A DNA stretch of 64,000 nucleotides from Marsupella aquatica (Eukaryota; Plantae; Marchantiophyta), in NCBI GenBank assembly GCA_973895155.1, contig OZ316897.1:15189375-15253374 (forward strand), read 5' to 3'. The notes below the pieces were generated by a model that searched no databases, had not been told where the DNA came from, and was given only the letters and a program-made list of their open reading frames with translations. Every line of letters begins with the position of its first letter. The first letter of the stretch is position 1. The position numbers and the translations under genes were made by a program. Below are positions 3,535 through 32,870 of the stretch, piece by piece.

Positions 3535-3629
3535 AGACAGGTGGACGAAGGTGGAGTTTCCTGGGTCGGCTTTCTACTTCAATACAATACAAAGCCAGTC
3601 CAAGGAACTCCACCATCGTGCAGATATCT
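3535..3629 (+). ncRNA. A-family stem-loop (pre-miRNA-like)
   Basis: GGTGGAGTTTCCTGGGTCGGCTTT pairs with AAAGCCAGTCCAAGGAACTCCACC using three G:U pairs; flanked by AGACAGGTGGACGA / TCGTGCAGATATCT. Confidence 0.7.
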
Positions 3630-3907
3630 GAATGATCTCACAGTCCGCATGGTGTAACGGTCCGTCCTCGACAACAATTCTTGCCACACGCGTAGGTCAT
3701 AGATAAGCAAACTTTGGGGAAGCTAATTAAACCTTTCCTTGATGTTGTTGACAGAGGGTTTTGTTGATCTAATTTGCACACCTCAATCGCTGGAGACAGC
3801 TAACGCCCACTCTGTACGTGTAGACAAACACCTCCGAAATGGCCCAGATTGAAGAAAGTCCAGCGTGGGCCAGGTCGTTCAGACGTAAGAACAATCGAAC
3901 TACTGAC

Positions 3908-3970
3908 GTATCTATCTGAAACAACCTTGTATCTATCTGAAACAACCTTGTATCTATCTGAAACAACCTT
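3908..3970 (+). repeat. Perfect 21-bp tandem repeat x3
   Basis: GTATCTATCTGAAACAACCTT x3, followed by TCAGATAG; the last unit folds as CTATCTGAAA/TTTCAGATAG. Confidence 0.95.
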
Positions 3971-5257
3971 TCAGATAGTGTTCTATGTGGTATCATAAGT
4001 GTCAGTAAGTACGTGGGCCCTCGGACCAAGATTTACTTTCAAAGGACCAACTGGCCAGTCCACAAGACGGTCGGAAACATCAGCATCGATATCTCAGCTA
4101 CAAGCGGTCAGTCCCATCCAATTGACATATGTCACTTCTCAGGACTGGAATACTACTACTGCAGTCGCGTACACGGCAGTAGAATCATTCAAACGGATAA
4201 TATACCAAGTAGAATCCTCCAAAAGATTTTTAGCAGTCCATTTTCTTTATTGACATGCATGATCGATTGCAATAAGTACACTTTTGGCCCGAGTTAAGGC
4301 TGTCCCGTAGGAAATGCTTCTGGACGGCCCGACCATAGCCCCTACATAGATCCTGGAGAAGAAATCTGAAACAGCAGTAAAAATCTATATATTGGAAGAT
4401 CCGAAGAAATTCTCGAAACGTAGAACAACCTATTGGACATCTGAAATTTGAAGGCGTGAGTGCGTCTTCACACTCAAACCATCAAAAGTGGATACCCTCA
4501 ACTGGAAAAATTTAACCAGATCATTATCTAGCAGGCATGTTAAGGACAGCAACTCAATAGCAGAGCCGTCTGAGCATTCTCTGTCGTACACTGGTCTATA
4601 GATAAATAGTCGACAGCTGCATCAAACCGGAATACCAAAACTGAGGATGATTCCCAAGGACAGGGCGAGAACCTCAAGGAGGAAAGGGTTGCCTACTCCG
4701 TCGAAAACTATCCAAGCTCCATTGACACCATCAAAACTAATACTAGCAGGAAGTCTTCCAGCAGCGATCATCAAGGTATCTAGTTTCTGTACGAAAAGAG
4801 AAAGCTAGCTGCCGGCCATCTTTCAGACATGTAAGCGAATTTCGCAGAAAGGCAGAGAGAGAGTTTGACCTTCTCGGAGCTCTACACTGGTCGACCTCCG
4901 CATGCTTCTCTTGATCACTACTATGCCCAACCTAGCTGGTTCAGTTGTATTCTCCATATGCGGACCGACACGTAGGGTGCATATAAAAGAGTCACCTCAC
5001 ACCCCGAGGGCAAGCCGCCGGAGACCTAAAAGGGCACTGGTCCGCGTAGACCTCACTGATTACCTGAATATGGCGCGACAGAATTTCTGGAAGGTTTGAT
5101 ATCTCTCGATGCGTCCAATGCCGAGAGAGCACAAATTACGTCCTAGTCCCGTCACAGAGAAACCGACCAATCTCTTTCAATGACTGCACTTTTCCGAGGT
5201 ATGTCTTTCAGACAGAGATCCAAAAGTAATGTTTCTGTTCGTCGTACGCTGATGTAG

Positions 5258-5349
5258 AGATGGTTGCTTGAAAGTGGGGAGACTTGGGCTGGTGTATTCT
5301 TCGCAAAGAAAATGCCAGTCCAAGTCACTCCACCATCGTCCAGACATCT
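5258..5349 (+). ncRNA. A-family stem-loop (pre-miRNA-like) with compensatory changes
   Basis: GTGGGGAGACTTGGGCTGGTGT pairs with ATGCCAGTCCAAGTCACTCCAC. Against consensus, TT>GA in the 5' arm is matched by AA>TC in the 3' arm, and TTAG/CTAA becomes TTGG/CCAA. Confidence 0.72.
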
Positions 5350-8300
5350 GAGTATTTTCGAGCTCACTACGCAGACTCGGGCGGACGTACGGCTTGCGGC
5401 AAAAGACCTGAAATGGTCGAGATTATTTTACAGGTCACAGCTCGCGGATCGATGAGTTTTGGCCCTGTCCCTCATTGTTGAAAGATGTGGCGTTTCTTTT
5501 GGACGACACTAAGGATGAGTCCAACAGACAATTAGAGTGAATCTAGCACTACGCAACGAATGCATGGCGCTCCGTTGAGATCTCCGTGTGCTTCTTCCAA
5601 GAATAGAATGTTAAACGAGGAAGGGAGTTCTGTCGCAATGTACTCCTTCCCCGAGGTCCATTGGGTTACTCGAGACCCGTGATTAAATGAGGACTTCTGT
5701 CCTCACGCGTCATAACAGGTCTGAAATGACAAAAAGCTGTTGTCACCTTATTCATTTAACCCCCTGGAACTTAAACACGGCGAAAGTACAGACAGCATCA
5801 AACCATTGACAAGGTCCCAAGACAAAAACAAAACCAGGGGCCCATGAGCCTGAAACCCTTCACACATTGCGTTGCAACTGGTTTTATAAATTACTTCTTG
5901 AATACTCCGCATAAGTGGCAGAATAAGAATGTCGAGGCCTTTTGTCCTGGAGATTTGGAAGCAGACAAATTTATGTGAACTCATCAATCTCTTCAGATTC
6001 CGTGTGCTATTGCATGTGTAGAAGACAGCCAAACAAACGTGGGGGTCCTTGAGCTGCCCTTTCATTATCAGGAAAGGCCAGTCCAAGCCAGTCCATTGTT
6101 GTGGACGCGCCTGAATATACTTCCACGTTTTCTGAACATGTAAACTCAAATCTCCCATAATTTGCAATCATTTGCATGTGTGATTGTATCGTTGGCAGAC
6201 TTCAATGTGTGTGCTCTATGTAGCCTATTCGTTGGCCTTGTCCTCCCCTACATAACAAATCTGCTCTTTCCTTACTGGAATGGTCCTCGGTGAGAGCCAA
6301 AACCAAACAAGAGAACTACCCACTCCCCCGCCCCCCAAAAAGTAGCAAGATGAGTCGAGAGCAGCTGTGTTCGGAATTGGAAAGCTGACTGTTCTGCACC
6401 CTTCCAGATCGATGTTGGATCAACAAAATTGAGCATTGCAATCCTGATTTGAGACAATCACGAAACAGTACCTAAATCAAAGCTATTTAACTAAAAATGA
6501 CCGGTTCCTCCATTCGCAAGATTGCATATTATTTAACCTAAAACCAAAAGTTAGCTTCTCTGCTCAAGGACATGCTTCAGTTACTCTCCGTTAGGGGTCT
6601 CTGCTGTATGGTTCGCCGGCACTTCAACTTATGTATAAATTGCTCTTACCTTTTAATTATTAAAGACATTCGGGGGGCGGGGGTGGCCAGGTAGTTCTAT
6701 ACGATTAAGTGAGAATGAGAATCAAGTGAGAATGAGAATGTGAGACTTGAAACTGGGGCATGTCGGGAAGTCTCCTGTTCCTCCTTAAATACTGGTCATT
6801 CCCTCCACTTGAGGGCTAGGTACGTTTATCATTTCTTTTTAGAGGAAGGTTTTTTAGATTCTTATAATGACTTTCTATTCAATTGACAATGTACAGTTAC
6901 ATCTTTAATAATGGTAAGAAGGCCCTTTTCCATAAGGCAAGTGTTTAATTCTTATAATGCCTTTATATCTAACTGACAAGTAAAGCCCCATTTTATATTA
7001 GTAAACTCTAGTACCTCTCTGAAACACAATTGAACAGAAAGTTAGACTACCATAAAATTCACACATGACCCAGGGACCCTCCCTATTACAAAAGAGTTGC
7101 ATGTGTGGGGAGAGATGAAAACAATTATGCTATTACGACAGATTTTCTCCAAATTGTATCATGAGCCACTTCTCAGGGCTTATTAAGGTTGTTTGATCAG
7201 CTGGGATGTTTTCTATTTGTGATTCCTCTGATCTGTATGGCACGCGCGTGAATGTAGACAGTGGCGAGAGTGAAGGTCGCGATCCTTTGAAGCTGAGCAC
7301 TATGTGAGTGCCATCCAAGAGCTCAGGTTTATAGAACTGATTATGCGTTGGGACAAATTCACAAACCAGAATTTCCCGACTGTATTTTGAGTCTTGTAAC
7401 TAGCCTCTACTCTCCATTACGGTAAGAAACACATTTAGGCCAAACATAGGACCACATAGAGTTTTATAGAATATGTTTCCACCTGAAATCTTTCACATTC
7501 TGCACAAAATCTGGATGGTGATTTGAATGTCACTAGTCCTCTGAATTTTACTCTCGGGTTGCTGAACTTTTATAAACATCTAGTGTTTTCTGTTTGTAGC
7601 TGCAGCTCCGTTGCCTAGAGAGGATAAAGAACTGTGAAGTACGTGCAGTTACTGATTATTTCATGGTTTTTCAAGATCCCTGATAGCATAGGTGGCGAGT
7701 GTCTCGATTGATTCCCACTCACCGGTAGTACACGGTCATCCTCCTTTGCCACAATCTTAACTTTAGTGACAAAGAGGTTCAATTCCGATCTGATAGTCGT
7801 GTATGCACTTAGGCGAGGCACATGGGCTGAAGAAAAGGTGTCGAAATAACCCGAACTCTATCTGTTCAGCCTTTGCTAGAGTCTCCATTAATCAAGAGTC
7901 CAAACTAGAGTAATGATCTTGACACTTTTCTGTAAAGTTGAAATGATGTTGCCCGGCTAGTCAAGACCTCAACTACTTGCCCGATTTTGTCTAAGGTGAA
8001 GTTTTTTCACCCTCACACACACCTGACGCCAACAGAGTATTGTTTTGATCGATAATAAAAATAAAGAGATTCAAGCGGTGGCCCGGCGGTGTGATTAGAA
8101 CATACCGATTTCCGAAAATATATAATTGTATTGGTATTTCTTGGAAATAGTAGTGGGGTCACTCGTGCATGGGCTATGGCGGCTGCGGTGATGTGCATTC
8201 TACGTCCAATCACATCCAAGGTTTCAATATCTTTTGGCTAGGGCTATGATTGTCAGGGTTATTATTTGATATTTGGAACCTTAGTGGTCTATGATCAGTA

Positions 8301-10679
8301 CATAGGTGAGTTCCAATTTCCAAAGTCCAAACCGATGCCTGTCTAACAACTATCATATGCAATTCAATTCTGCCAGCACTGCCCCGTGCATGGTCTGTTA
8401 ACAGAATCAATTTCAGCATCGATTTCGGCCATAGGATGTCTTGGTAAGATTCCAAAGGAGATATTTGGGACCATCAGATCATGGAAAACATATATAAAGT
8501 GGCTCTGCAGCCATGCGCAATCAACCTGCACATTTAAGCTCCGTCACACCTTTTCACAGGGTATGGAGCAGGGAAGACAAAATGGTTTTGCACTATCACA
8601 ACATTTACTCAAACACAACACCGGACTTCTGGCAATCACAATAACAAAGTGTCTGCAATGATGCAAGTTTGCAATGACTGTACACTTCTTGTGATGACAG
8701 CACTTCCGTAACCATAACAATTTGAGCTTTACAATAAGTTGTTGAAATGACAACTCTCTAACAATAAGAGAGCTATACGAACTATTCCAAGTGACAACCC
8801 AGACTAAAATAGGGGGTCTCCAATATCATAATTTAATGATCCTTAATATAACTTAAAGTTATGGATTGCGAGATTCATAATCCATAATTCTTTGTTATAA
8901 AGGTTGATCATACCATGACCATAAGTCACTCTACATGCTAGTGACAACAAACATTAGGTAACCCTGTGAAAACTCTATGGCCGTTTCTTTACTAGCAAAA
9001 ACAATCATCAATACTATGAAGCTTTGAGAGGCCCTAGTGATAACACGTCTGATAACACGTCCGCAGTATATGCAATAACAAAAGTTCTTGACAATTACAT
9101 AATACCAAAAATGCATGACACTAAATACACAACTTTGGCTATAACAGCAATTCGTAACAATAACTTAATAACGACAATTCATGAGTGACAATTCATGGCA
9201 AATAACTTAGTCATGTCAGCTGCACCGCTGGTGGGCTAGTCGTATTTGTCCATATAATAATCCTGAGATACCGACTCTTCAACGTCACTGTTACACCGCA
9301 AAGTATGGAGAGGTGTGCGGACCCTTCGAGGCTCTTGTCTGCTGGAGTCGGACTCGACTCCTCCATTCCTGCTGAGTTCCGAGTGCAAACAACGCCGTCC
9401 AGGTCTGTCGTTTCTTACACGAAAGCCTTTTATTCTTCGAATGCTCTGTAGATGGTCATGTGCAAACCCGTCAATTCGAATGTGTCAATGCAATCGTAGC
9501 GCAGTTACGGGAGCACTCCACGCAGAATGAGCTAGTCATTCTCGCCAGCTGAAGCGTCAGTGCATGGGTTTTGTCTATCCACCTGCGCGCCTGTGCTGAG
9601 TATGTCCAAGAGACCGGGCGGCTTGTGAGATGAGACAGACTTACTTGAAGAAATAGCTCAACTTAACAAGCGGGTTTGGGAGGCAAAGGCCTGAATGAGA
9701 ACAAGCAAAACCTCAAAGGATGCCGTGCTCAGTCTGCGTGCGTGGCGGCGTTAGGTTTCGAGCTCGGAGGGACCTGTCCGCTTGACTCACTAGTGTAAAA
9801 CATATTTTTTGCTAGCCTGAAGATTCGGAGGCGGAGCAGCAGCCACGGTTGTGAGGGATTGATTCCATGCATGCTCTTCTGCTCACTGCGGGTAAAGCAG
9901 CATGGATTGCACGAACTTGCCCCACAAGCCCCTTGTCACACTCGGCAGACAAGGTTCCATGTTTGTGACGCTCCAACGCCATGTCTGTAGGAGTTGTTCG
10001 CAGCAAATGTTACTGTCGAAATATTCTCCAGGGTCACAAGGCACGTCTCCAAAGTAGATCAACGACGATCTCCGACTTGTTAATTATTAGAAACACCTTT
10101 GAGCTCAAATCTGTGTGCGCGTGGTGAGGCAGAATATAGCAAGCTCGTCGGTTTAAAGAGAAGATGTGTGAGAAGAAGGCGATGGGGCATCGTGGCCAAT
10201 CGGAACGACGTTGATGGAATGGAGACTGTCTAATCGATTCTACAAGGAGACTCTAATAATAGCTTCAAAGATCGAGGGCTGGTATTATTGGTAAAAGTAT
10301 TCGGGATCCACTGGTAAGATTCGGAACATTTTATAGTCGCGAAGGAGAAGACTACAACATTCTGAGTTACCAGAAGCATGTAAAGAAGCTGCAGTACATT
10401 GTTTTCATTTGGACGCTGAATTCTTCAATGAAATGCTTCAATGACCCGTGCACGCCTCTCATACTTCAGAGAACGTGACATTTTGTTCAGGCTTGGAAAA
10501 TAATCTCGAAAGCAAACTAAATTCCATGTGTCCCCGGGGACATACAGCTGTTGATTCAAGACAGAAGAATGGGTTCCATTGGCAACGGCCCACACTGATA
10601 AACATTCTACCACATATTCTAGTTACACATATTCGAGTTACAGGTGAGTGACTGATCCACTCAAGACTTTATTAGTAAT

Positions 10680-12650
10680 TGTTTTATGTGACTTTATTCA
10701 TAATTATAATTTTTATATTAACTTAGAAACCAAGAATTAGTTTAATTGTTAGATCCTTAAAATCAGTGCCAAGCATGCCCTTTGTAAAGTGAAGTTTTGT
10801 GATTTTAAATACTATGTTATTTAAAATGAAATATTAACTTATATATTTATAGTCTTGTAATTTTAAATATTATATCATTTTAAAATAAAATACTAATTTA
10901 TATATTTATTATTAAATTAGAAATAAAAAAATTTTAAATATTATATTATTTTAAATGAAATATTAACTTGTATTTTTATGGTCTTATAATTTTAAATATT
11001 ATATCATTTCAAATAAAATATTAATTTATATATTTATGATTAAAAATGGAGTAATTTTAAATACTATGTTATTTCAAATAAAATATTAACTTGTATATTT
11101 ATGATATGAATGAAAGAGTCTTCACATTCACATCTTTCCAATATAAGATAGATGTAGTCTCAGGTAAAATAATTAGATCAAATTAATTTAAATGTTTAAA
11201 TCATTAATTTGTATAATTTTTTTTATAAAATATTTTTAAAAATTATTTATCTAAATTATTATTTTAATAAATCTTAACAATATTCCATAAATTTTAAAAA
11301 TTTATTAGTTTAAATTTTTCTCAAATATTAAAATGTTAAATATTGTTTTAAAATTTTTTTTATCTATTATTAAATATACATATAAAATTACATAATCTAA
11401 ATACAAATTTAAAATATATTTTATTTATTAATAATAATTAAATTTTATAATTTTATAATTTCATAAATATATAATTTTTTGTGTATTTTAATTACTATAT
11501 ATTTATCCATATTATGTTTATTTAATTTAATTTATTATTTAAATAATAAAATTTAACATCATAAATCAAAATATTAAAATAATAAAATTATACAAAAATT
11601 ATAAATATTTAATTTTCTCAAATAAACATATTATTATAAAATATTATATATATAATCATTTGAAAATAAAAAGAATTCAATATTTATTTTATAATGATAA
11701 TTTTATTTTTAAAAATTTATTAAATTTTAATAATAATATTTGTATTTATGTTTTAAATAAAAATTCATTTTTTAATATTATTAATTTAATTTAATTTAAA
11801 ATTTTAATTTATGTTTTTTATAATGATATAAAAATATTAATTAATAAAATATTAATTAAAACTTATTAGAAAAATTACATAATTTTTAATTATATAAAAA
11901 TTATAAATCATAATTAATCAATCTAATATATATTTATCATTTATATAAATATAATTTAAATAAATATCAATTAATTAATATATATATATATTATATTTTA
12001 AAAATTTATTATATAATATATTAAATTTTTTTTGTAAATTAAAATATTTATAATTTAATTAAAATATTTTATTTAATTTATTATCATTTAAATTATATTA
12101 CATAAAATTTAATAATATATAATAATTTATTTATTTTAATAATGAAATATATATAATTAAAATTATTTAAATATAATTTATTTTGATTAGAGTTAACAAA
12201 ATTAAAGTTAGAATTAACAAAAAATTTGTAAAATAAAATAATAAATTTAAAATTATATTTAATTTTTAATTTATTTATAATTATATTATTAAATGTTAAA
12301 AAAATTGTATTTTTAATTTATAAATTTTATAATCATTTTATTTAAAAAAAATTTGAAAATTATTAATTATATTAATAAATTTTTATTTTATTTATTATTT
12401 AATTTAAATTTAAATTATGAAACCTCATTATATAGAAATCTTATTATGATATGTAATTTTTTTAGATTCTAAATTCTCTAAAATATTTTTTTAATTATTA
12501 CTATAATATTTTAAATTTTAAATGAAATAAATATAAATATTTTTATGAATTTTAAAATTATATTTTTTAAGAAAAATTGTTAAATTTTTCTATAATAGCA
12601 ATAAAATAACAAAAAAAAAATATTGTAATTGATGTATTATTTTTGTGGAA
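10680..12650. other. Extremely AT-rich island (probable hypermutated TE relic) with ~60-70-bp sub-repeats at ~10800-11105
   Basis: Almost no G/C for ~2 kb with fairly abrupt borders; the ATTTTAAATA(C/T)TAT..ATTT..AA(T/A)..AAATATTAA motif repeats about five times at the left end. Confidence 0.75.
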
Positions 12651-15700: not shown

Positions 15701-16036
15701 TGTTAGGGTTTTGACTCAACCTTGGCTACTACTTTAACTAGAGTAAGTTAATCGGAGGCAACATTAGTTGACTAGACTCCTCATGAAGAGATAACCCTCT
15801 TTGTATCCCATGAAGAGAGAGCACTTAGTTGAGAACTTTGAGAGAGAGAGAGAGAGAGCTTGGACTATGGAGCTCTGGTGATATGCACTTTTTGTGTTCA
15901 TAGTGAAGCTATTGCCTGATGCGGCCGTGGACGTAGCCTTGACGGGGTGAACCACGTATCTTTGTGTCGGTGTACTCGAGTGTTGTATATATGAGTGATG
16001 ATTATGAGATGTCATGCTGTCCATTTTGATCCTACA
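15701..16036 (+). mobile_element. Solo LTR, copia-like family B
   Basis: TGTTAGGG...GATCCTACA with perfect 5-bp TSD CATCA (15696-15700, 16037-16041); GTGGACGTAGCC..GGTGAACCACGTATCT motif shared with family A; homologous to 49532-49830. Confidence 0.88.
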
Positions 16037-17224: not shown

Positions 17225-17568
17225 TGTTAGATATTGCTCTAGTCTTGTGACTCATGAGCTAACCACAGTTAGTCTAACTCTGGTTAGGACTTAGCTAATG
17301 TTAACGGTAGTGCTGGTGTGCATATAGCTAGGGCTGATGCTAGACCCTGGTGGAACTTAGGCTCATTGTTACGGAGCTAGTTGAGAGATAGGGAGAGCTT
17401 GTGCTGTGGATGCTTGGTATGGCCGGTCGGCCTAGAGTGCAGTAAAGCTCTTGTGTGTTCCCGTGGACGTAGCCTCATGTGGAGGTGAACCACGTATCTC
17501 TCTGTGTCGACTATTGTGCGTTGGATAGTTCATGGGCTTGCCGTTGCGAATGTCGTCTATGCTCAACA
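17225..17568 (+). mobile_element. Solo LTR (344 bp) of the copia family at 19287-24307, opposite orientation
   Basis: TGTTAG...TCAACA; about 10 differences from the reverse complement of 19287-19630; flanks AAAAC/CAAAC (TSD with one mismatch). Confidence 0.92.
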
Positions 17569-19286: not shown

Positions 19287-19630
19287 TGTTGAGCATAGAC
19301 GACATTCGTAACGGCAAGCCCATGAACCATCCAACGCACAATAGTCGACACAGAGAGATACGTGGTTCACCTCCACATGAGGCTACGTCCACGGGAACAC
19401 ACAAGAGCTTTCCTGCACTCTAGGCCGACCGGCCATACCAAGCATCCACAGCACAAGCTCTCCCTATCTCTCAACTAGCTCCGTAACAATGAGCCTAAGT
19501 TCCACCAGGGTCTGGCATCAGCCCTGGCTATATGCACAATAGCACTACCGCTAACATTAGCTAAGTCCTAACCCGAGTTAGACTAACTGTGGTTAGCTCA
19601 AGAGTCACAAGACTAGAGCAATATCTAACA
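19287..19630 (-). repeat. 3' LTR (344 bp, complete)
   Basis: Matches the solo LTR 17225-17568 end to end; adjacent to the polypurine tract. Confidence 0.95.
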
Positions 19631-19837
19631 AACTCCCCCTTGACTCTTGTCTTGGGGACTGGACTAAATACAACCATATGGAATCCTCAGCGAGAAGTTC
19701 TAGACAATCACCAAACCAGGTCTCCCCCTAAAAACCACAAGGGTTAACTAAGGGTTAACTAGAACTAAGTCGTAGCCAAACAGGAATGAGTAATCCATAT
19801 ACAAATAGTCACACATTGCTAAATAACTCTACTTGCA

Positions 19838-22800: not shown

Positions 22801-23922
22801 TGAAATGAGATTTTTCATCATGCTGGGAATGTGTCTTACATTCCTCAACGTTCTTACAACACCATCAAACATCTGAAATCTTACAGATCCAAGTCCAACA
22901 ACTTGACATGGGATTCCATTTCCCATCAACACTGACCCATTGGAAACCGTGTAAGAATTGAAAAAATCTCTCCTAGAGCAAATGTGAAAAGTACATGCAC
23001 TATCTAGAATCCAGTCATCACTCCCTGGATTTGACACTACGTTGAGAGCATAACCTTGATATCATAATATGTCATCATCATCGAGTAAATCTACCTCATG
23101 CGAGCTCGATGCCGCGTTAGCAGATGCAGTAGGGACCTTTACTCGACAATCCCTTTTCATGTGGCCAGGCTTGCCACAATTCCAACATGCAAGAGGCTTC
23201 CTCTCTTGCGATTTCCCTCTGGATTTAGATCTCCCCCGTGATGTAGATCTAAACCTGTTTTGTCCATTTGAGCGTTGCGCTGCTCTCCCACGGTTCACAT
23301 TCAGCGCAGTGCCAGAAGAAGATGCTGTCTATGATTGACCCAACTTCTTCTGAGCATCATCAGACAGTAAAGAGCTTACCACCTCATTATACAAAATGGA
23401 CTTCAGATCTCTGTACAAGAGCACCTGTTTCAAGCCCTGATATGACAGCGGTAAGGAGCTTAGCAGAAGCAAGGCCTTATCCTCATCTTCAACTCCTTTT
23501 CCCAGGTTTGACAGATCCACCGCTAGACTGTCAAACTCATCCAAGTGATCCTGCATCTTGCTCCCTTCCTTGAGCCTGAGGCTCATCAAGAGAGACTTCT
23601 TGTACAGCCGGTCTGACGCATCTTCCCGGTAGTACTTCTCTCTTAGAGCCTTGAATAGTGATGCGCAATCCGCATAATCATCCAGCTGCTTGATGATGTG
23701 CGGCTTCAGATAAAGCATCACTGTATTAACAGCAATCACCTGCTCCTGTCTCCACTGCTTTTCTGAGATCTCCTCCTCTCCATCATACTGCTCTCGCGAA
23801 GAGAGCAGATGAGCTAAGCCCATGGCCCAAAGAACACCCTTCACTTGCTTCTCCCACAGCAAGTAATCAGTACGACCATCGTACTTCTCCACCTCAAACT
23901 TTACTCCTCCGAATCTAGCCAT
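19838..23922 (-). pseudogene. Copia gag-pol polyprotein, interrupted
   Basis: Starts MARFGGVKFEVEKYDG. Contains gag, zinc knuckle CWNCGKPGHMKRDC, protease WILDSACTFH, integrase HHCC (WHFRLGH..CEHC) and core (HSDVWGP, RSDNGGEY, QQNGVSER), RT (YKARLVAKGF, QMDVVTAFL, IYVDDML) and RNase H (GYVDSDY, STTEAEY, NPADAFTK). In-frame stops at ~23329, ~23062, ~22297; frameshift at ~20490. Confidence 0.95.
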
Positions 23923-24047
23923 CTCCCTCTTCGTCCCAACTACCAATAGCTCTGGTAGTAGTACAGCTTCCTCCACTGCACGCCGCACCGGTGATCGTAC
24001 CGGTGTTACTTGTTCCTCCTCAAATGGTAGCAGCTCCTCCTCAGACT

Positions 24048-24307
24048 CTCCACATGAGGCTACGTCCACGGGAACACACAAGAGCTTTACTGCACTCTAG
24101 GCCGACCGGCCATACCAAGCATCCACAGCACAAGCTCTCCCTATCTCTCAACTAGCTCCGTAACAATGAGCCTAAGTTCCACCAGGGTCTAGCATCAGCC
24201 CTGGCTATATGCACAATAGCACTACCGCTAACATTAGCTAAGTCCTAACCCGAGTTAGACTAACTGTGGTTAGCTCAAGAGTCACAAGACTAGAGCAATA
24301 TCTAACA
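24048..24307 (-). repeat. 5' LTR lacking its last 84 bp and adjacent PBS
   Basis: Identity to the 3' LTR stops abruptly at CATGTGGAG (minus strand); no TGGTATCAGAGC PBS next to the junction. Confidence 0.92.
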
Positions 24308-25560
24308 AGATTGAGGCTAATGGGGTCCATGCTTTGGTGGAAGAGTGGCTAATGGTGTCATACAAATGTAGCCAATATTAGCCAAAAGTGGCAAAAGTTT
24401 TTTGGGGAGGTGGAATTTGGCTAAAATTCACACTTAAAAGATACGCCGTAGTAGACACTGGAGAGGTAGCTTGACCATAGCAGGCAGTTTAGGGCCAGGG
24501 TCAGACAGGGTGTCACTTAAGTTTCTGGCAAGCCACATTGCATCAACTGTGCGCATATGTTGGACCACATAAAATTTGTCAATACTGTGATCATATGCAG
24601 ATTTGCAAGCAGCCTAGTATGGCATATAGGCTAATATAATAGTCAAGCATGTGTTTGGCAAGCAGTCAGGGTTAACCAACTTAATTAGGTCTGTGTTGCA
24701 CGTGCCATTGTTTAAAAAAATGTGGCCCTTACAACTCTTGCATTGTCGGCAAAAAGGTGATAGACAAATCTGCACACAATCGGCTAAGGCAAGTTTGTTT
24801 GTTTTGGTTTATATGAGATTGCAAGGTTGGGCGGGTAAGGGCCGCAAATGTTGCAGCCCTTGCCCTTGAAAGTGCACTTGTTTAGCCGTGAGGACTGGCT
24901 CGATCAAGAGGGGGGGCGAGTTAGGAAAGTCGCGGTCAGTCCCACGGTTCCACCTGATGACACATAGGGCTTATAACATCGCGGACCCTCGTGCACGCAA
25001 GACAACTCTGAAAATCTATTAATATTCTTCATTGTAGATTTTTCCAACACACTAAGACATAAACTGTATACATACGTGATTATTTGTTATAGTCTACTTT
25101 CGGGCTTGGATTGACTCCGCTTGGGAAGAGAGAGGTCTATTTTATGGGGAGGTTGGCTATATCAGTCCTTCTAAGAACAAAAAGCGGCTACCGACTACTT
25201 TCGTGGATTGACTCGATTGGAAAAGAAAGTCTATTATATGGGGAAGAGGGCTAGATATCGAACTGTCAAAGAACAAAAAGCGACAAACAGAAGACGGGAT
25301 CCTAAAGGAAGGAATATAGGTAGAGTACAATCTGCTGGCTGGTAGGGGGTACATGGTACATGTGCAGCTTGCGCTATATAATTATATAGCAGGCACATAA
25401 AGATATGGTGGGCAGGTACATACAGATATGATGACATACCTACATTTGGATTTGGCCGAATCTAAATTCGACGCATGGGGGTGGGGAAATATGTTTTGAT
25501 GCTCCTATATGACAACCAACTTTTGACTAAGTTGACCCCAAACCAAGGCTTATTTACAAA

Positions 25561-26138
25561 CAGCTTTTTATCAACCTGTCCCCCTAACTTGTTGAAATTT
25601 GTAAGCTGTCCCCCAAACCATTTTATTTACTTCCCTGCCCCCCATTCCGTATATGGAATAGTATTCTCTCATTTTGGGGTTCTGGATGCCAGGTGGCAAG
25701 GCATCATTGGCCTGGACTTTTTTTCCTTTGTAAAAACGGGGCTCAATGCTGCGTTCTCCTGTGTACTCGGGCTGCGATGGGAGGTCAGGGCTTCAGGAGG
25801 TCTTAGGGGGAGCGGAGGTCCGGAATTCACGAGGGCTTAGGGGGAGCGGAGGTTTGTGGGGGGGGGGGGGCGTTTGGCCTCCTCCCGGGTCTGAAGCAAA
25901 GCCCGTTCCATCAAAACGGGCCGCGGCGGGGAGGGGGCAAGCAGCAGTCGGGCAGGGAGAAGCAGTACTTGGCCAGAAACATCCGGGCCAATGACGCCTT
26001 GCCACCTGGCATCCGGAACCCCAAAGATGAGAAAATACTATTCCGTATACGGAATGGGGGGCAGGGAAGTAAATAAAATCATTTGGGGGATAGCTTAGGA
26101 ATTTCAACAAGTTAGGGGGACAGGTTGATAAAAAGCTG
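25561..26138. mobile_element. Mutator-like (MULE) MITE with ~155-bp TIRs
   Basis: 25561-~25716 is the reverse complement of ~25982-26138; perfect 10-bp TSD TATTTACAAA (25551-25560, 26139-26148); GC-rich non-coding core. Confidence 0.93.
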
Positions 26139-28233
26139 TATTTACAAAAGTGACTCCATTCTAATCTAATTACTACACTGCCCCCCTAATGGTATATTAC
26201 TTCAGTTACCAGTAGTCCTGCCCAGGAGTGGAACACATTGGCTCTCCTTCATCCCAGTTGGGTTAGATTAACCTAATATCACGCGCTAGCACCCCATCCC
26301 CACCATTGCTATGGCAGCAGCGTCGCAGCCCCAAGACGGAGAGACCCGCCCGGAGCCTGACCCTAATGCAATCAACTTTTCCCTTGGGAAAAAAGCAAGC
26401 TTCTGGCGAGTACATATTACATATGTGGACACATCTTTAATTAAATTTGGCTAGTATTACATGTATACATACATCTTTAATATGAAGAAGAAATGGACAC
26501 TCTGGCTTGATTTCTTCAGGACGCTGGCAGCGGGTCCAATATTGTTTGCCAGTCCGCAAAATTCTCTCTCGCCCTCTCTACATTCAAACCAAATCTGCCC
26601 ATATAACCGGGCCCATCTTGGCTATTGTCAATAGTGCCCAAGGTGAACATTATAGTGTCCATAGAAAGTGGAGTAAACATTCATTCATAGTGCAACTGAA
26701 CAAAACAATGAGAGCTATGAATACACGGTAGCTCTTATTTACCTTATTTAGATACTGTAGTTGTGATTCAACACTCGCTTGCCGTACATCCTACTAAAAC
26801 TGCTATAACATAAAGCGGGATATAAAGGCTACATAATCATTCCGGCAATCTTCTTAGGTCCAAGGAGAGATTCTGGACTCTCTGGTTTAGGTTGAGCATG
26901 ATCCAAAGTTTAGACGAGATCCAAAAGAACAGTTGTTTAGTACACAAACAATCGATAAACATGTCTGCAGGTCATGTTTTCTTACTTTTCCCAAATTCCG
27001 TCCCGATCCTTGTAGCACAATCATGTGACTTCATCTGAATCTTGAAAGATGAACGGTGAATGTGTCATCATCAGCGTTTTTCTATTTACAAAATTTCGCC
27101 AAATTCTTACATAAAAAAGGAAAAAAGAACGGAAAATTGGCAACAGATAGCCGAAATTCCTGTCAAAAAACGCTGGTCACCACCATCTTAACAGCACGTT
27201 ACTCACGTTTCCCACTTGTACATCTGTCGTGACTTGTTAAATTGATTCAGCATCATTGATCAGGCAATTGAATGACAAAAGAGTCTTCTGATTACTTTTG
27301 GCACCATCAAAGTTTGAGACTGAACTTTGCACACTGACAAAAGTACGAGAAAATGGACGGATCGGAACTCTTCAACCATAACTCTCAATCATGCTGTTTC
27401 ACTATTTGACAAATACCTGATGACATCAACTTAACAGCACAGCGTGTGATAAGGCAGCTTTGAATGGTGGGACCAATGGGCCACAATGACTGAAGTCTGA
27501 TGCAAAATGACGCTACATTTCTTCTAAGTAGGTTTTCTCACCTGGTTCTTTGATAGCCCTGACATCATTTTGCCTTTTGGTTATTTTGTTTGTTATCGTC
27601 AGCCGCGCGAGGTGGCGTGCCGCTCGCGTTTAGGATCTCTTTCAATTACTGTACAATTATAATTGAAACCAGCTATTAAGAGGCTCACCCAGTCACACTT
27701 TCACCGGCCTATTTGTGAAACCTCGAGTCTGGAAATAGCCTAGTCGGTCGCCTGCACGTCCCATTAAATGCTGAGGGTCTTAACAATGCCTTCGTTGAAT
27801 CCTTTACACTGATCACTGATGTCCGCCTCCTGAAACGAAGATATTATTCGGTTGCCAGGTGATTGCAGTGCAAGCTGAGCTGCCGTGTACTTCGCCGGAC
27901 ACCATCCCTTGGCCAGGACTACGGATTGCTACGCCGATTTGAGTTTCGTTCGGTCCATCATCGCTTTCTCACAGTCATGAATTCTACTATGTGACATTGA
28001 ATTCATGTCATTGCATGACACCGATAGATACGGCGAAAGATACCTAGCGTTCTGCATTACTTTATGGTAATCATTATATTGCAACTATAAGTATCTAGAT
28101 GAATTAGGTAGGTTAGCAAAGAGCTTCTGAGCCTACTGCAGTTATTTAAATAAGATGATTGGGTTTATTATAATATGGGGTGACTCAACATATGGTGCGT
28201 TGTGATATTTTCTATCATATATACACTCAGTGG

Positions 28234-28241
28234 TATAAATA
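28234..28241 (+). promoter_or_regulatory. Possible TATA box upstream of hairpin array 2
   Basis: TATAAATA about 700 bp before the first clear hairpin; motif only, common in AT-rich DNA. Confidence 0.2.
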
Positions 28242-28926
28242 AAATAATTAGATTTATCAAGATATGAATGACGTCATACACCTATATTGTGACATTTTGA
28301 TGTGCAAGCTGCTGTTGGTATAGGTACTCGATTGTTGGGGCAGAAAATCTCGGAAGACAAGTACCATTTATTAAAGTACTACAGTATTTAGATACAAATG
28401 TGGCGATGGCATCACCCAAAAATCTATTGCAATTCACGTATAGAATAATATGTCATGATATGAAGTAGAACCAATTTCTTGCCGGTGCTATAATTAAGCA
28501 GCGACCTTCTAGTTCTATTCGTATTTGACCCGGGAATATGTCAACCTCGATCAGATCTGCGATCATAATGATGACAAGCGACTGCTTATTAAGGATGGTT
28601 GAAGTCGTAGTGATAGTAAGCATGGCAGGAGAGTGGCCCAGGGGATCGAAACATTACACATTGGGACTACGACTCCCTTCCGACCAACCCCAACATATAT
28701 ATTTGGACAGCAATGATATTGGAGGACGTTTCTATGTGTTACTATCAACCCGATCTGACAAACGGGACGAGAGGAACGGTAAGAAATTGAAGTCCTGCCA
28801 GGTAGCTAGGCTAGTTTATAGAACGATTCGAACGCTGAGCGCAGAATAAGACCTACGAAAACCCTGTCTACTGCTGGTTGAAGCGTAAGCGAATTCATCT
28901 GCTGTGAATGGAGTTCAGTACATAAT

Positions 28927-29018
28927 AGACAGCTGGACGAAAGTGGAGACTGCTAGCCTGGTATTATCTTCAGAAAGAAAAGCCCGATCGAAGAAACTCC
29001 TCCAGAGTCCAAATATCT
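28927..29018 (+). ncRNA. A-family stem-loop
   Basis: Lower stem TGGAC/GTCCA is a compensatory version of consensus TGCAC/GTGCA; upper stem GGAG../..AAGAAACTCC is degenerate. Confidence 0.55.
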
Positions 29019-29727
29019 GTATGAGCTGTAGAAAGGTAGCTTCCGGGGAAGCATCCTGGACGTCCACCTTTGACAGACCAAAAAGCTCAAACCTCATAGA
29101 AGCCCTACTCTAAATCAGAGCTTCAATTGATGAACTTTCTATGGCGTTACCTATGGGAGATTCTGCACAAAAGTGGAGCTTAAGCCAAGATTGGCATTTC
29201 GTTTGAAAAGAATTGCTCTGTCCAATCTAAAATAGTTTACCCGTTGCAACTCTGAAGAATCTAGATTGTAAGATCATTCAGTACGTGTCTGATCGTGGAA
29301 CTGCAACATTTCCTTCTCACAAAGTAAGGATGACTGATATTGATCCGGCCAAATATTCAGTTACTCTAAGTGAAATCTAGTTCGTTACCCTCTAGGGGAA
29401 AGAATACCGTGCCTCTAGGTTGCGAGATCACCCAGATGCATGTCTATTTGATGGTGGAGCTAGCTGGTAACTGTGAAAGATCGAGATCAACCATTGTCCT
29501 CTAGAACTATGAGATCAACCTCTAGAACTATGAGATCACAGAACTACGATATCACTTATTTTTCGATGGTGAAGTGGTACTTTAGATTGGGTGAGACATT
29601 TCTTTCGAGAAGAAACACCAGATCCTGCAAATTCTTGTGCAAAATATGCGAATATAATGGGTCAAGTTGGGCTTTAATTTATTTCATTGCATGCTTATGA
29701 GCGCATCGAAGCCAACTGAACAAACAG

Positions 29728-29788
29728 AGATGGAGGTTCTTGGTCGATGTTTGCTATTGAAAGAACCTCCACCATCGCTCAGATATCT
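29728..29788 (+). ncRNA. A-family stem-loop (short)
   Basis: TGGAGGTTCTT/AAGAACCTCCA perfect 11 bp; T>G and A>C compensatory against consensus; ends in CAGATATCT. Confidence 0.6.
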
Positions 29789-30827
29789 GGGACGTCGACG
29801 ATCGATGTCCTAGACGATCTAACAGCGATACAGGTGTACGTACAGTACTTACAAGAGAAGTGGAGTCACACGAGTCAATCGTTGAGAGGTAATATTTTCG
29901 AACTGTGATGGGCTCAGACGTCACGAGTATTTGTCAAGTCAGGTGGAAGAGATAGCTTAAATTCGTCCCTTCGGCTGATGGTGTTAGAGGCATAGAATAG
30001 AGCTGTGTGAAATTGGAGCTTCGTGGGTAGTTTGCAAACGTCTCCCTCACCCTCAGGACAAGTGCTACAATTATGAATATAGTGGTCAGAAGGGTACTTC
30101 AAGCGCAAGAAAATGGCCTTCTCATTACGCTGCTTTGCAAGGACGTACGTAGTCTAATTTTCTTGGGATAGGAAAACCAGTTCAAGAAATCCATCAAATT
30201 GCGGAAGTTTGCATTCTAGGTTGATGTCACAGCCTAGCTCGAAAATTTTCGTCTTCAGGGCTAGTATCCGTGATCCTCCACTGTTGTGGAAAGAACTTGA
30301 GACCCAGACATTCAGCCTAAGTTCACGTTGTTAATGAGAATTGTTTCGAATTTATTAAGCATCAAAGAAGCTCCTGGAGAAGTCCGAAAATGTTTAGCTC
30401 AAGCGATCTCGAGGTCCATCGATCGTCAAGCTGGCGTTTCTTCAGAATGAAAACGCAGTCCAATTCAAGAAACTTCACTAACGCGCAGATGTCTGGGACA
30501 ATCGATTTCGAGTTATAGAGTATCACTTTCACGATTCATCCTGGTAATCTACCTATTGAAACTGAATCTCGGGCACCGCCATTTTCGATTACTCTTTTAA
30601 TGGTAAACCTGATTGAGGATCTGTTGATCTGGTTGCTATTAAACAGCACCACCAATCCAGTGCTTGTATGCAACAGAAATTGGGCCAGAACGCAGTACTA
30701 CGGTAGAGCTGCTAACTGTCGAAGAAACTTTGGTAATATCACCATACCACTCCAAAAGTTCTTGGGCGAGATCCCGAACCAATTCTCGTCGTAGCCAATG
30801 CCCTGTCTACAATTCTTCATGAATAGA

Positions 30828-30919
30828 AGACAGCTGTTCGGAAGTGGGGATTCTTACACTGGTATTTCCTTGGAAAAGAAAAGCCCAGTCGAAGAAACTC
30901 CACTACCGTGCAGACGTCT
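30828..30919 (+). ncRNA. A-family stem-loop
   Basis: AGACAGCTGTTCGGAAGTGGGGATTCTTACACTGG - 22 nt - CCAGTCGAAGAAACTCCACTACCGTGCAGACGTCT. Confidence 0.68.
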
Positions 30920-31196
30920 GAATAATTATGCAGCGGCAGAAAGGTAGCTTTCCCTCTCGAAGAAATGTGTCTCACCAACGAGAAGTTGATGAAATTTAAG
31001 GCCAGTGAAGGTCTCCCAGTCTAATGTTGTGGATGAACGACCTTCACAAACATTCAGACTTCCAAAGCGTGCACAATGGTCATCGAACGCAAATTGGAAG
31101 TTGAAGAAGTCGGCAATCTGACCATTCTCGGTGGATGCTATCCTGATTTCATGAAAATCCAAATTTGAAAATTGAGAATGACGGCCTTGGATTACA

Positions 31197-31295
31197 AGAT
31201 AACTGCACGAAAGTGGATCTTCTTAGACTGCTATTTTCTTCAGAAAGTTGAGAGAAGAGCCCAGTCTAAGAAACTCCACCGCCGTAGAGATATCT
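31197..31295 (+). ncRNA. A-family stem-loop
   Basis: AGATAACTGCACGAAAGTGGATCTTCTTAGACTGC - 29 nt - CCAGTCTAAGAAACTCCACCGCCGTAGAGATATCT. Confidence 0.7.
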
Positions 31296-31470
31296 AAACT
31301 TATGATTAATTAGGACGGAATTGCATGCTGCCTACTAACTGTGAAACTTCTGAGACTAATTTCAGGGCGATGAACTTACTCGCCCGACATCATTCGATAA
31401 TCTCTTCTTGCCATAATATCGAATTTCAGGACGGAGGTTTTATTTCAGGACGAGTCATCACTAAACTAAA

Positions 31471-31575
31471 AGATAGCTGCACGAAAGTGGAGTTTCTTAA
31501 ACTGGTATTTTCCTTGGACTAGAGAGAATTCAAGAAAAGCCCAGTCTAAGAAACTCCACTGCCGTACAGATATCT
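31471..31575 (+). ncRNA. A-family stem-loop (closest to consensus)
   Basis: AGATAGCTGCACGAAAGTGGAGTTTCTTAAACTGG - 35 nt - CCAGTCTAAGAAACTCCACTGCCGTACAGATATCT. Confidence 0.72.
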
Positions 31576-31732
31576 AAACTTATGATCTAAACGGGAACTG
31601 TCTCGTATGCAACCTCGGAAATGAATTTGAGTCGTTGAAGTTTGCGCCATCCGACATCTTCGTAGCATCTTTTCATTTCATGAATCATTCCATCAAATCC
31701 GGATTTTAACGACTATGGTAGTCATCACTAGA

Positions 31733-31829
31733 AAATAGCTGCACGAAAGTGGAGTTTCTTAAACTGGTATTTTCCTCTGACTCGACAGAAAAGCCCAGTC
31801 TAAGAAACTCCACTGCCATAAAGATATCT
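31733..31829 (+). ncRNA. A-family stem-loop
   Basis: AAATAGCTGCACGAAAGTGGAGTTTCTTAAACTGG - 27 nt - CCAGTCTAAGAAACTCCACTGCCATAAAGATATCT. Confidence 0.7.
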
Positions 31830-32262
31830 GGGTGAACTTGCAGCCGCAGATATGTGCCTTTTCTTTCGAGGAGTAAGTTGCCTACGAGTGACAACTTGTA
31901 GGTCCCCGACTCTATAGCGTGCCCAATATTGTCCGTGGATCATCTTGGAATTCATAAACATTTCGATGTAGTGAGCATGAATCTAGTCACGGAATACAAG
32001 GTAGTTGCATGAAGGTGGACCTTCTCAAACTGGTACTTTCTTTGGAATTGAAAGAAAAACCCATTCTATTTAAAAAACTTCACCCTCGTGACCGCCCTCA
32101 TGCATAGATGATCTCAGTTCAGAAATAAATTCTTTTGCAGTGAATCCGTCGTAGTCTGAAGGGGATGCCGTTGAAATTCCCAAAATCGCGAGGATGATGG
32201 TGTGATTTCACTTGTGAAGTTCGAACTTCATAGCTCGAGAACAGTCAATGATCATGCATGGG

Positions 32263-32360
32263 AAATAGCTGCTCGAAAGTGGAAGCTCTTAGGCTGGTAT
32301 TTTCTTCACAACTGTAAAAAAAAGCCCAGTCTAAGAAACTCCACTATCGTACAGATATCT
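32263..32360 (+). ncRNA. A-family stem-loop
   Basis: AAATAGCTGCTCGAAAGTGGAAGCTCTTAGGCTGG - 28 nt - CCAGTCTAAGAAACTCCACTATCGTACAGATATCT. Confidence 0.7.
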
Positions 32361-32780
32361 GGGAGATTCTGAGCCGCTTCAGGAGTTTACGACTTTTTCC
32401 TTCCCATTTGAGAAGGAAACCGAATATCAATGGACCTCTGCAGAGTGAATTGGCTGAACAATGTCGATATATGGATCTCTTGATAGCACGAATCATACTA
32501 GGATACTAAGCAGAAAGGTGAAGGAATATAATATGGCTGTAGGAAGTGGAGATTCTAACACCAGTGTTTTCCCAGTCTAAGAGATGATATCTCCATTCTG
32601 TCCAATTGCTGTGCGAGCATACAAAGTGGTCGAGGACTAAATTTGAAAGCAATGAATCTTCGCAGAATAGTCGGGAGGCAGAGGAAGTTCGCCCGGCCCA
32701 ACGTTACCGATGAGTCATCATTCGATTTCGTGGAAGTTCAAATCTCATAACTCGACTAAGACAGTCGGTCTTGGAGTAGA

Positions 32781-32870
32781 ACACAGATGCGCGAAAATGG
32801 AGCTTCCTCACGTGGTATTCCCTTTTAAAAGAAAGCCCAGTGCGAGAAACTCCATGTTCGTGCAGGTACT
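32781..32870 (+). ncRNA. A-family stem-loop (diverged)
   Basis: ATGGAG/CTCCAT is a compensatory version of GTGGAG/CTCCAC; lower stem TGCGCGAA/TTCGTGCA. Confidence 0.6.

What the first reader, a model, noticed from the sequence alone, without database searches (positions are those of the whole stretch)
3535..32870. Compensatory substitutions and one-strand G:U bias indicate selection on folded + strand RNA
Seen, paired changes against consensus: 5258 copy TT>GA with AA>TC and TTAG/CTAA>TTGG/CCAA; 29728 copy GAGTTT/AAACTC>GAGGTT/AACCTC; 32781 copy GTGGAG/CTCCAC>ATGGAG/CTCCAT; 28927 copy TGCAC/GTGCA>TGGAC/GTCCA. Non-Watson-Crick positions are mostly G:U on + (four in the 5258 stem, three in GCTGTGT/ATATAGT at ~30002-30083) and would be A:C on -. 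Inference: neutral decay of a DNA palindrome should give G:T and A:C about equally, so this points to a single-stranded, directional structure under selection.
Basis: partly seen in the sequence, partly recalled or inferred. Interest (0 to 1): 0.82.

Follow-up and report, generated by a model that had tools for sequence, protein, structure and literature searches.

The report
MicroRNA-like hairpin array, minus strand
A probable liverwort genome carries a row of about a dozen copies of one ~95-nt hairpin shaped like a plant microRNA precursor; matched mutations have kept its base pairing, but the wobble-pair bias points to an RNA read from the minus strand, not the plus strand as first proposed, and no RNA data yet show that it is expressed.

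Summary
The compensatory changes are real. On ten alignable copies, 10 stem pairs show a change on both sides, against 4.5±1.6 in shuffles.

The strand claim is wrong for the family. A:C mismatches on + (G:U on −) outnumber G:U on + by 44 to 17 cells and by 28-30 to 12-13 inferred events (p 0.03-0.008). The minus strand folds better in 11 of 13 copies.

The arms are conserved (69-75% pairwise identity) while the flanks are at random level (44-45%). All copies point the same way, five of them 262-274 nt apart, and none has target-site duplications.

On the minus strand the fold has a 15-nt lower stem, a ~21-nt duplex and an upper stem. The 5' arm of the duplex varies less than its partner (20 against 47 deviations) and holds a 21-mer that starts with U and is identical in four copies.

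My best reading is an undescribed tandem MIRNA-type cluster transcribed from the minus strand; expression is untested. This scan has already flagged similar hairpin arrays on other pieces of the same genome.

The parts
28927..33474 (-). Main array: 11 recognisable copies of the hairpin, all in one orientation. Five consecutive 5' arm starts are 262-274 nt apart (31191-32257).
   Evidence: (families D1, D2, D7)
31471..31575 (-). Best-preserved copy. On the minus strand it reads 5 bp, mismatch, 8 bp, mismatch, 20 continuous bp, internal loop, 8-bp upper stem, loop. MFE -56.6 kcal/mol on - (z -9.1) against -46.4 on +.
   Evidence: CM 95.6 bits
31538..31558 (-). Candidate mature 21-mer (minus-strand 5' arm, stem positions 18-38, begins with U). 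The same 21-mer is found in the copies at 31197, 31733 and 32263.
   Evidence: least variable block of the hairpin
30828..30919 (-). Intact copy. The candidate 21-mer differs at one base (position 12). MFE is about equal on the two strands (-39.2 on -, -40.4 on +).
31197..31295 (-). Intact copy, MFE -40.2 on - against -37.3 on +.
31733..31829 (-). Intact copy, MFE -45.6 on - against -33.2 on +.
32263..32360 (-). Intact copy, MFE -43.7 on - against -34.0 on +.
32781..32871 (-). Diverged but folding copy, with a compensated G:C to A:U change at stem position 17. MFE -35.9 on - against -31.2 on +.
33383..33474 (-). Diverged copy that folds well only on the minus strand (-41.7 against -22.9). Ten of its mismatches on + are A:C.
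28927..29018 (-). Partly decayed copy whose fold is no better than shuffles. It carries the compensated G:C at stem position 10.
29710..29788 (-). Shortened copy with the apical part deleted and a compensated change in the duplex (GAGGTT / AACCTC).
   Evidence: CM 25.1 bits
30421..30494 (-). Decayed copy. The + strand 3' arm is recognisable; the 5' arm is lost.
   Evidence: (D7)
31999..32098 (-). Decayed copy with an insertion in the conserved arm.
   Evidence: CM 30.7 bits
3535..3629 (-). Upstream diverged copy in the same orientation. MFE -45.9 on - against -38.6 on +.
5258..5349 (-). Upstream diverged copy in the same orientation. It is the exception: six G:U on + against one A:C, and MFE -46.4 on + against -35.4 on -.
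6023..6112 (-).
   Evidence: CM 28.6 bits, E 1.4e-5; fold

Best explanation
This is a tandemly duplicated cluster of MIRNA-type genes in a liverwort genome, most likely transcribed from the minus strand as one or several non-coding primary transcripts. Each unit folds into an unbranched hairpin of about 95 nt. Read from its base on the minus strand, the hairpin has a lower stem of about 15 nt with two conserved mismatches, a duplex of about 21 nt, a conserved small internal loop, a short upper stem and a variable loop.

By analogy with plant base-to-loop precursors (inferred, not shown), DCL1 would make its first cut about 15-17 nt above the base and its second cut 21 nt further on. That would release a duplex whose conserved 5' arm is the guide; in the best copy this arm lies at window 31538-31558 on the minus strand and begins with U.

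Selection has kept the guide sequence and the pairing of the whole stem. The opposite arm and the lower stem were free to change as long as pairing survived, through G:U wobbles or double changes. Loops and spacers drifted to saturation. The target of the small RNA is unknown.

Shown here: the hairpins, the covariation, the strand bias, the unequal conservation of the arms and the tandem origin. Inferred: transcription, DCL processing, guide identity and function.
For: 1. Pairing is kept by covariation. On the minus strand, 33 pairs across 10 copies give 90.9% standard pairs. Ten pairs have double-sided changes (shuffles 4.5 +/- 1.6; 1 of 500 reach it). The covariation score is 0.293 against 0.232 (1 of 500). 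Slid controls give 42-51% paired. Parsimony on trees gives 10-11 Watson-Crick-to-Watson-Crick double events.

2. The strand evidence favours minus.
- Cells: 44 G:U on - against 17 G:U on +.
- Unique variants: 23 against 10, p = 0.035.
- Tree-based events: 28-30 against 12-13, p = 0.028 and 0.008.
- The same 29 pairs are 90.0% paired on - and 80.7% on +.
- MFE is lower on - in 11 of 13 copies, Wilcoxon p = 0.017.

3. Conservation is unequal in the way a guide and its star are. In the duplex block (stem positions 17-38) there are 20 deviations from consensus in the minus-strand 5' arm and 47 in its partner (p = 0.0013). In the lower stem the figures are 38 and 26. The 19-mer core of the conserved arm matches without mismatch in six copies, all on the minus strand. 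The 21-mer starting with U is identical in four copies.

4. The geometry fits. The hairpins are single and unbranched. Seven copies have at most 5 unpaired positions in the candidate duplex. z-scores run from -5 to -9 for intact copies.

5. Selection is confined to the hairpin. Mean pairwise identity is 0.69 and 0.75 in the arms and 0.44-0.45 in the 100-nt flanks; shuffled controls give 0.43. Whole ~265-nt units align only in the arms.

6. The origin is tandem duplication, not transposition. All copies share one orientation, spacing is 262-274 nt, neighbouring copies keep some flank similarity (families D1 and D8), and no target-site duplications exceed the null.

7. No long ORF with a family match lies near the array.
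Against: There are no RNA data of any kind, so transcription, strand and processing are all inferred.

No orthologous loci could be fetched. All covariation therefore comes from paralogues in one window, which share ancestry.

The strand bias is only moderately significant once events rather than cells are counted (p 0.008-0.035). One well-folding copy (5258) leans the other way, and one (30828) is neutral.

Transversion mismatches are not rare: 23-24 single events, against 39-41 single transitions from a Watson-Crick pair. Several copies are evidently decaying.

Thermodynamic asymmetry of the proposed duplex does not clearly favour loading of the 5' arm. Rfam has no matching family.
Confidence: 0.58

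Rival explanations
1. One reading: the same hairpins are selected as folded RNA, but transcribed from the plus strand. The conserved arm would then be the 3' arm.
For: The 5258 copy has six G:U on + against one A:C and folds 11 kcal/mol better on +. The 30828 copy is marginally better on +. The hairpin is nearly symmetric, so it folds significantly on both strands (z from -4 to -10 on + for intact copies).
Against: Family-wide counts go the other way: 17 against 44 cells and 12-13 against 28-30 events. The stem is 80.7% paired on + against 90.0% on -. The minus-strand MFE is better in 11 of 13 copies. On + the conserved block offers no 21-mer that begins with U (sequence).
Confidence: 0.12
2. 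The hairpins are selected as folded minus-strand RNA but are not canonical miRNA precursors. They could be hairpin-siRNA sources, binding sites for double-stranded-RNA-binding proteins, or stabilising or processing elements of a long non-coding RNA.
For: Everything that shows structural selection fits this reading equally well. The lower and upper stems are conserved as well as the duplex.
Against: One ~21-nt block on one arm is much better conserved than its partner. The block sits about 15-17 nt above the stem base and starts with U. That pattern is expected for a guide strand and not for a purely structural element.
Confidence: 0.15
3. A miniature inverted-repeat or foldback transposable element family, conserved because its copies are young. 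No selection at the RNA level is involved.
For: The unit is a ~95-nt near-palindrome. Copies also lie 23 kb upstream (3535, 5258, 6023). Flanks are unrelated between most copies. The region is rich in transposons. Many plant MIRNA genes are known to derive from MITEs (my own knowledge).
Against: All 14 recognisable copies have one orientation. Spacing is regular at 262-274 nt. Adjacent copies keep flank similarity. No target-site duplications exceed the null. The arms are themselves 25-31% diverged, so the copies are not young, yet they still pair. The wobble bias is strand-asymmetric and the two arms are unequally conserved.
Confidence: 0.08
4. A DNA palindrome kept by arm-to-arm gene conversion or templated repair. 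The 'compensatory' changes would then be copied mutations, with no transcription needed.
For: Double-sided changes are what such conversion would produce.
Against: The same mismatches persist in most copies: stem positions 6, 36 and 37 in 7-8 of 10 copies and position 15 in 8 of 10. Conversion would have erased them. Single-sided changes far outnumber double ones. Conversion predicts no G:U against A:C asymmetry and no inequality between the arms.
Confidence: 0.05

Closest known systems
Plant polycistronic or tandem MIRNA clusters of one family, for example MIR395 and MIR2118 clusters in angiosperms and the polycistronic miRNAs of Physcomitrium patens (about 25% of its miRNAs, as cited in PMC9291395)
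   Same: Tandem copies of one ~100-nt foldback in one orientation, a few hundred nt apart. The miRNA arm is conserved, the star arm is compensated, and loops and spacers have diverged.
   Different: The sequence matches none of these families: no Rfam family at gathering score and no literature match to the core. Expression and processing are untested here.
Marchantia polymorpha MIR genes, including its single reported polycistronic locus MIR390-MIR11676 (PMC9291395)
   Same: Liverwort lineage, non-coding hairpin genes of similar precursor size.
   Different: That locus holds two unrelated hairpins. This one holds about 11-14 paralogous hairpins. The species is not M. polymorpha, to judge by the copia element (63% identity to the nearest M. 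polymorpha protein).
Base-to-loop processed plant pri-miRNAs (a lower stem of ~15-17 nt below the duplex; known from work on Arabidopsis MIR172, MIR171 and others; my own knowledge)
   Same: A ~15-nt lower stem that ends in a mismatch directly below a ~20-21-bp duplex. Lower-stem pairing is kept by compensatory changes at positions 4, 5, 10, 14 and 16.
   Different: Processing direction is inferred from geometry only.
MITE-derived MIRNA genes and foldback elements
   Same: A short near-palindromic unit present in many copies.
   Different: No target-site duplications, a single orientation, tandem periodicity and unequal arm conservation.

Membership tests
Plant MIRNA gene (annotation criteria of Axtell and Meyers 2018; my own knowledge) | Single unbranched foldback shorter than 300 nt, with no secondary stems interrupting the duplex | tested here: met
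   One hairpin loop in 13 of 14 copies; total length 78-105 nt
Plant MIRNA gene (annotation criteria of Axtell and Meyers 2018; my own knowledge) | miRNA/miRNA* duplex with at most 5 mismatched positions | tested here: met
   2-5 unpaired positions in the candidate 21-mer in seven copies (3535, 31197, 31471, 31733, 32263, 32781, 33383). More in the decayed copies, and six each in the 5258 and 30828 copies
Plant MIRNA gene (annotation criteria of Axtell and Meyers 2018; my own knowledge) | Small-RNA reads showing precise excision of miRNA and miRNA* with 2-nt 3' overhangs, replicated | not testable with these tools
   No small-RNA or RNA-seq data were available
Plant MIRNA gene (annotation criteria of Axtell and Meyers 2018; my own knowledge) | Dependence on DCL1 | not testable with these tools
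   Needs a mutant or knock-down
Plant MIRNA gene (evolutionary footprint) | Guide arm more conserved than star arm, and both more than loop and flanks | tested here: met
   20 against 47 deviations in the duplex block; arms 0.75 and 0.69, loop 0.46, flanks 0.44-0.45 pairwise identity
Known miRNA family (Rfam 15, literature) | Match to a curated family or a published mature sequence | tested here: not met
   No hit at gathering score. Only weak generic hairpin matches of at most 29.7 bits against cut-offs of 55 or more. No relevant full-text or supplement match. miRBase itself could not be searched
MITE / foldback transposon | Target-site duplications flanking the terminal inverted repeats | tested here: not met
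   Best flanking direct repeats are 3-5 nt at inconsistent offsets, within the null distribution
MITE / foldback transposon | Dispersed insertions in either orientation | tested here: not met
   All copies are in one orientation; five are spaced at 262-274 nt. Only this 64-kb window could be examined
   17 against 44 cells; 12-13 against 28-30 events

The most novel reading that the evidence does not exclude
This array is one of several large lineage-specific arrays of miRNA-like hairpins in this liverwort; the scan has flagged arrays of about 26 and about 50 copies elsewhere in the genome. On that reading, repeated tandem amplification of single hairpins is a distinct way of evolving small-RNA genes in this lineage. 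It would be comparable to the primate C19MC or the grass MIR2118 clusters, and unlike M. polymorpha, where only one two-hairpin polycistron has been reported. It might serve dosage or a germline or defence programme, and would be more than an ordinary regulatory miRNA.
Probability: 0.15. Interest if true: 0.7.

Novelty: new member of a known kind. Interest (0 to 1): 0.45.

Why it matters
If it is expressed, this would be a new liverwort miRNA family encoded by an unusually large tandem cluster. Liverwort miRNA repertoires are mostly lineage-specific, and polycistronic loci are reported as rare in the model species (PMC9291395).

The locus also makes a methodological point. A G:U against A:C bias can assign the transcribed strand of a near-palindromic hairpin from sequence alone, but only when all copies are counted as events. 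A single copy, here 5258, can point the wrong way.

The candidate 21-mer gives a concrete probe for small-RNA blots, degradome searches and target prediction.

Tried and rejected
1. Rfam. Nothing reached gathering score over the whole window. At lax E-values only generic animal miRNA-hairpin models matched, far below their cut-offs and mostly on the minus strand. I treat these as chance resemblance to any long hairpin.

2. Orthologues.
- A metagenome scan with the conserved 19-mer gave 17 single hits. None had an inverted partner within 200 nt, so they are chance matches.
- The other DNA collections hold viruses, bacteria and archaea, so I did not scan them.
- The listing of cluster members gave no accession or name for that protein.

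3. Literature. I searched full texts and the held supplements of the liverwort and land-plant miRNA papers for the core of either arm. There was no relevant match. The supplements of the two main Marchantia miRNA catalogues are not held, so absence from miRBase is not established.

4. Coding repeat. Rejected. Hairpin lengths differ by amounts that are not multiples of three (91-105 nt), and the ORFs over the array are short and match no family.

5. snoRNA cluster. Rejected. A 42-bp stem is not a snoRNA shape, and Rfam gave no box-type matches above noise.

6. Mutational strand asymmetry as the cause of the wobble bias. Unlikely. GC skew is about 0 to +0.09 and AT skew +0.04 to +0.07 around the array, far too small to give 44 against 17. 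The opportunities for the two kinds of transition are equal over the two arms (base counts of the consensus).

7. Whether the 5258 copy is simply inverted. Rejected. Its arm-specific features (CGAAAGTGG in the 5' arm; CGATGGTGG on the reverse complement of the 3' arm, as in the 3535 copy) show the same orientation as the rest.

8. A first pairwise-identity measure with free end gaps was uninformative (first part). I replaced it with a stricter one.
Full report
WHAT IS THERE. The window is eukaryotic. It holds a Ty1/copia LTR retrotransposon at 19371-24308. The nearest named relatives of its reverse-transcriptase ORF are liverwort proteins: Marchantia polymorpha 63%, Riccia fluitans 60% and Calypogeia fissa 58%. 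The best hit, at 88%, is an unnamed ENA protein. This fits the scan's earlier notes that the genome is a liverwort, and it suggests the species is not M. polymorpha.

The repeat finder shows a family of ~95-nt imperfect inverted repeats (families D1, D2, D7 and pairs I8-I22).
- Ten copies align over both arms without gaps: 3535, 5258, 28927, 30828, 31197, 31471, 31733, 32263, 32781 and 33383.
- Four more are recognisable but decayed or truncated: 29710, 30421, 31999 and, newly found with a covariance model, 6023.
- Further relics seen by eye near 29155, 29995 and 32530 were not recovered by the model.
- All copies have the same orientation.
- In the core of the array the 5' arm starts are 274, 262, 266 and 264 nt apart.

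CHECK OF THE OBSERVATION.
- 5258 copy: U:A and U:A become G:C and A:U at stem positions 24-25.
- Three copies: A:U becomes G:C at position 29.
- 32781 copy: G:C becomes A:U at position 17.
- 28927 copy: G:C at position 10.
- 29728 copy: GAGGTT pairs with AACCTC.

I then tested pairing on an alignment of the ten copies with the consensus structure of 33 pairs on the minus strand.
- 90.9% of cells are standard pairs.
- Ten pairs have changes on both sides, against 4.5 +/- 1.6 in shuffles (1 of 500 shuffles reach it).
- The covariation score is 0.293 against 0.232 (1 of 500).
- Sliding the partners by 1-3 columns drops pairing to 42-51%.

Parsimony on NJ and UPGMA trees of the copies gives 10-11 independent Watson-Crick-to-Watson-Crick double events. 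So the compensatory changes are real and exceed chance. The caveat is that the sequences are paralogues from one locus.

THE STRAND. I compared the 5' arm with the reverse complement of the 3' arm, which favours neither strand. The ten copies then show 292 matches, 66 transversion differences, 17 differences that are G:U on the plus strand and 44 that are A:C on the plus strand, meaning G:U on the minus strand (the ungapped count gives 18 and 45).

Because copies share ancestry, I also counted events rather than cells:
- Distinct variant pair types: 23 against 10, p = 0.035.
- Parsimony events on trees: 28 against 13 (p = 0.028) and 30 against 12 (p = 0.008).

Other measures agree. The same 29 stem pairs are 90.0% standard on the minus strand and 80.7% on the plus strand. 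The minus strand has the lower MFE in 11 of 13 copies, by 10-19 kcal/mol in four of them (Wilcoxon p = 0.017).

The exception is the 5258 copy, with six G:U on + against one A:C and an MFE 11 kcal/mol better on +. Its arm-specific features show that it is not inverted. The 30002-30083 pairing with three G:U can be read, but it belongs to a relic that no longer forms the family hairpin.

Local base skews are too small to explain the bias by asymmetric mutation. Over the two arms together, the opportunities for the two kinds of transition are equal.

SELECTION IS CONFINED TO THE HAIRPIN. Whole ~265-nt units align only in the arms.

| Region | Mean pairwise identity | Shuffled control |
|---|---|---|
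| Plus-strand 5' arm | 0.69 | 0.40 |
| Plus-strand 3' arm | 0.75 | 0.42 |
| Loop | 0.46 | 0.33 |
| 100-nt flanks | 0.44-0.45 | 0.43 |

Some neighbouring copies still share flank sequence. The 31253 and 31533 copies are 94% identical over 54 nt that include the downstream flank, the 30877 and 31787 copies are 76% identical over 75 nt, and there is an upstream GTCATCAC motif. The units therefore arose by tandem duplication and not by separate insertion. No target-site duplications exceed the null.

Four stem positions (6, 15, 36 and 37) are mismatched in 7-8 of the 10 copies. That argues against homogenisation of the two arms by DNA-level conversion.

ANATOMY ON THE MINUS STRAND. In the best copy (31471-31575) the fold reads, from the base: 5 bp, one mismatch, 8 bp, one mismatch (15 positions in all), then 20 uninterrupted base pairs, a small internal loop, an 8-bp upper stem and a variable loop. 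The MFE is -56.6 kcal/mol with z = -9.1.

The least variable block of the whole element is the minus-strand 5' arm at stem positions 17-38.
- It shows 20 deviations from consensus across ten copies, against 47 in the arm opposite (p = 0.0013).
- In the lower stem the ratio is 38 to 26.
- A 19-mer from this block matches with no mismatch in six copies, always on the minus strand; the plus-strand arm matches only with 1-3 mismatches.
- From position 18 the block reads as a 21-mer that begins with U and is identical in four copies, with one to three differences in five others.
- Seven copies have at most five unpaired positions in this duplex.

Half of the double-sided compensatory changes lie in the lower stem (positions 4, 5, 10, 14, 16, 17). 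There, only the structure should matter.

MECHANISM. What is shown is the structure, the covariation, the strand bias, the unequal arm conservation and the tandem origin.

What follows is inferred from established knowledge of plant miRNA biogenesis, which is my own knowledge and was not tested here. A lower stem of about 15-17 nt below the duplex is the signature of base-to-loop processing by DCL1. A 5' U is the AGO1 preference. A guide arm that is better conserved than its compensating star arm is the usual evolutionary footprint of a MIRNA gene.

The array therefore most likely encodes a family of miRNA precursors on minus-strand non-coding transcripts. No ORF with a family match lies next to the array. 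The target is unknown, and no complementary site lies elsewhere in the window.

COMPARISON WITH WHAT IS KNOWN. Rfam 15 has no matching family. The core of either arm is absent from the searchable literature and from the held supplements of liverwort and land-plant miRNA papers. miRBase and the main Marchantia supplements could not be searched.

Tandem clusters of one MIRNA family are well known in plants. In M. polymorpha, however, only one polycistronic locus, of two unrelated hairpins, has been reported, whereas about a quarter of Physcomitrium miRNAs are polycistronic (PMC9291395). I file this as a probable new member of a known kind.

The scan has already noted this array and similar hairpin arrays elsewhere in the same genome. 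I did not see those sequences, and they are not independent support.

LIMITS. There are no RNA data. The species is unidentified. The event-level strand bias is only moderately significant.

Noticed in passing
window 25560-26140: A ~600-nt near-perfect foldback with stems of roughly 180 bp and 90% complementary arms. MFE is -389.5 kcal/mol and z is -26. Mirrored ORFs run on both strands. It could be a long hairpin-RNA locus or a foldback element, and it is unrelated in sequence to the hairpin family.
   Followed up: partly
window 19371-24308: A Ty1/copia LTR retrotransposon on the minus strand with 261-nt LTRs that are 99% identical. gag, protease/integrase and RT are split over four ORFs, so the reading frame is broken. 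Nearest named relatives are liverwort elements at about 60% identity.
   Followed up: partly
window 17225-17568: A third LTR-like copy in inverted orientation: 344 nt, 97% complementary to 19287-19630 and 98% to 24048-24307. It may be a solo LTR or the end of a second, nested element.
   Followed up: no
window 10000-14000: A very AT-rich block (21-28% GC) of degenerate 58-71-nt and shorter repeats, in sharp contrast with the ~42% GC of its surroundings.
   Followed up: no
window 15729-15985 and 49568-49806: Three collinear inverted-repeat segments (41-76 nt, 84-93% complementary) lie 34 kb apart and bracket the region that holds the main array. They could be two copies of one element in opposite orientation.
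   Followed up: no
In 110-nt sliding windows most spacers fold no better than shuffles (z above -2.1). The exceptions lie near 29789, 30224 and 30995 (z -3.1 to -3.5). The stretch 30990-31063 carries a fragment like the conserved arm (CM 10.7 bits).
   Followed up: partly
window 8-339, 18635-18929, 36069-36302, 50453-50719, 50968-51190, 53053-53299, 62940-63162: Several short tandem-repeat arrays with periods of about 138, 59, 117, 74, 58, 124 and 26-86 nt. They are unrelated to the hairpin family.
   Followed up: no
L012:510-533: One 1.8-kb metagenome contig matches 24 consecutive bases of the conserved arm (the variant of the 30828 copy), but it has no inverted partner and no convincing ORF. 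Probably chance.
   Followed up: partly
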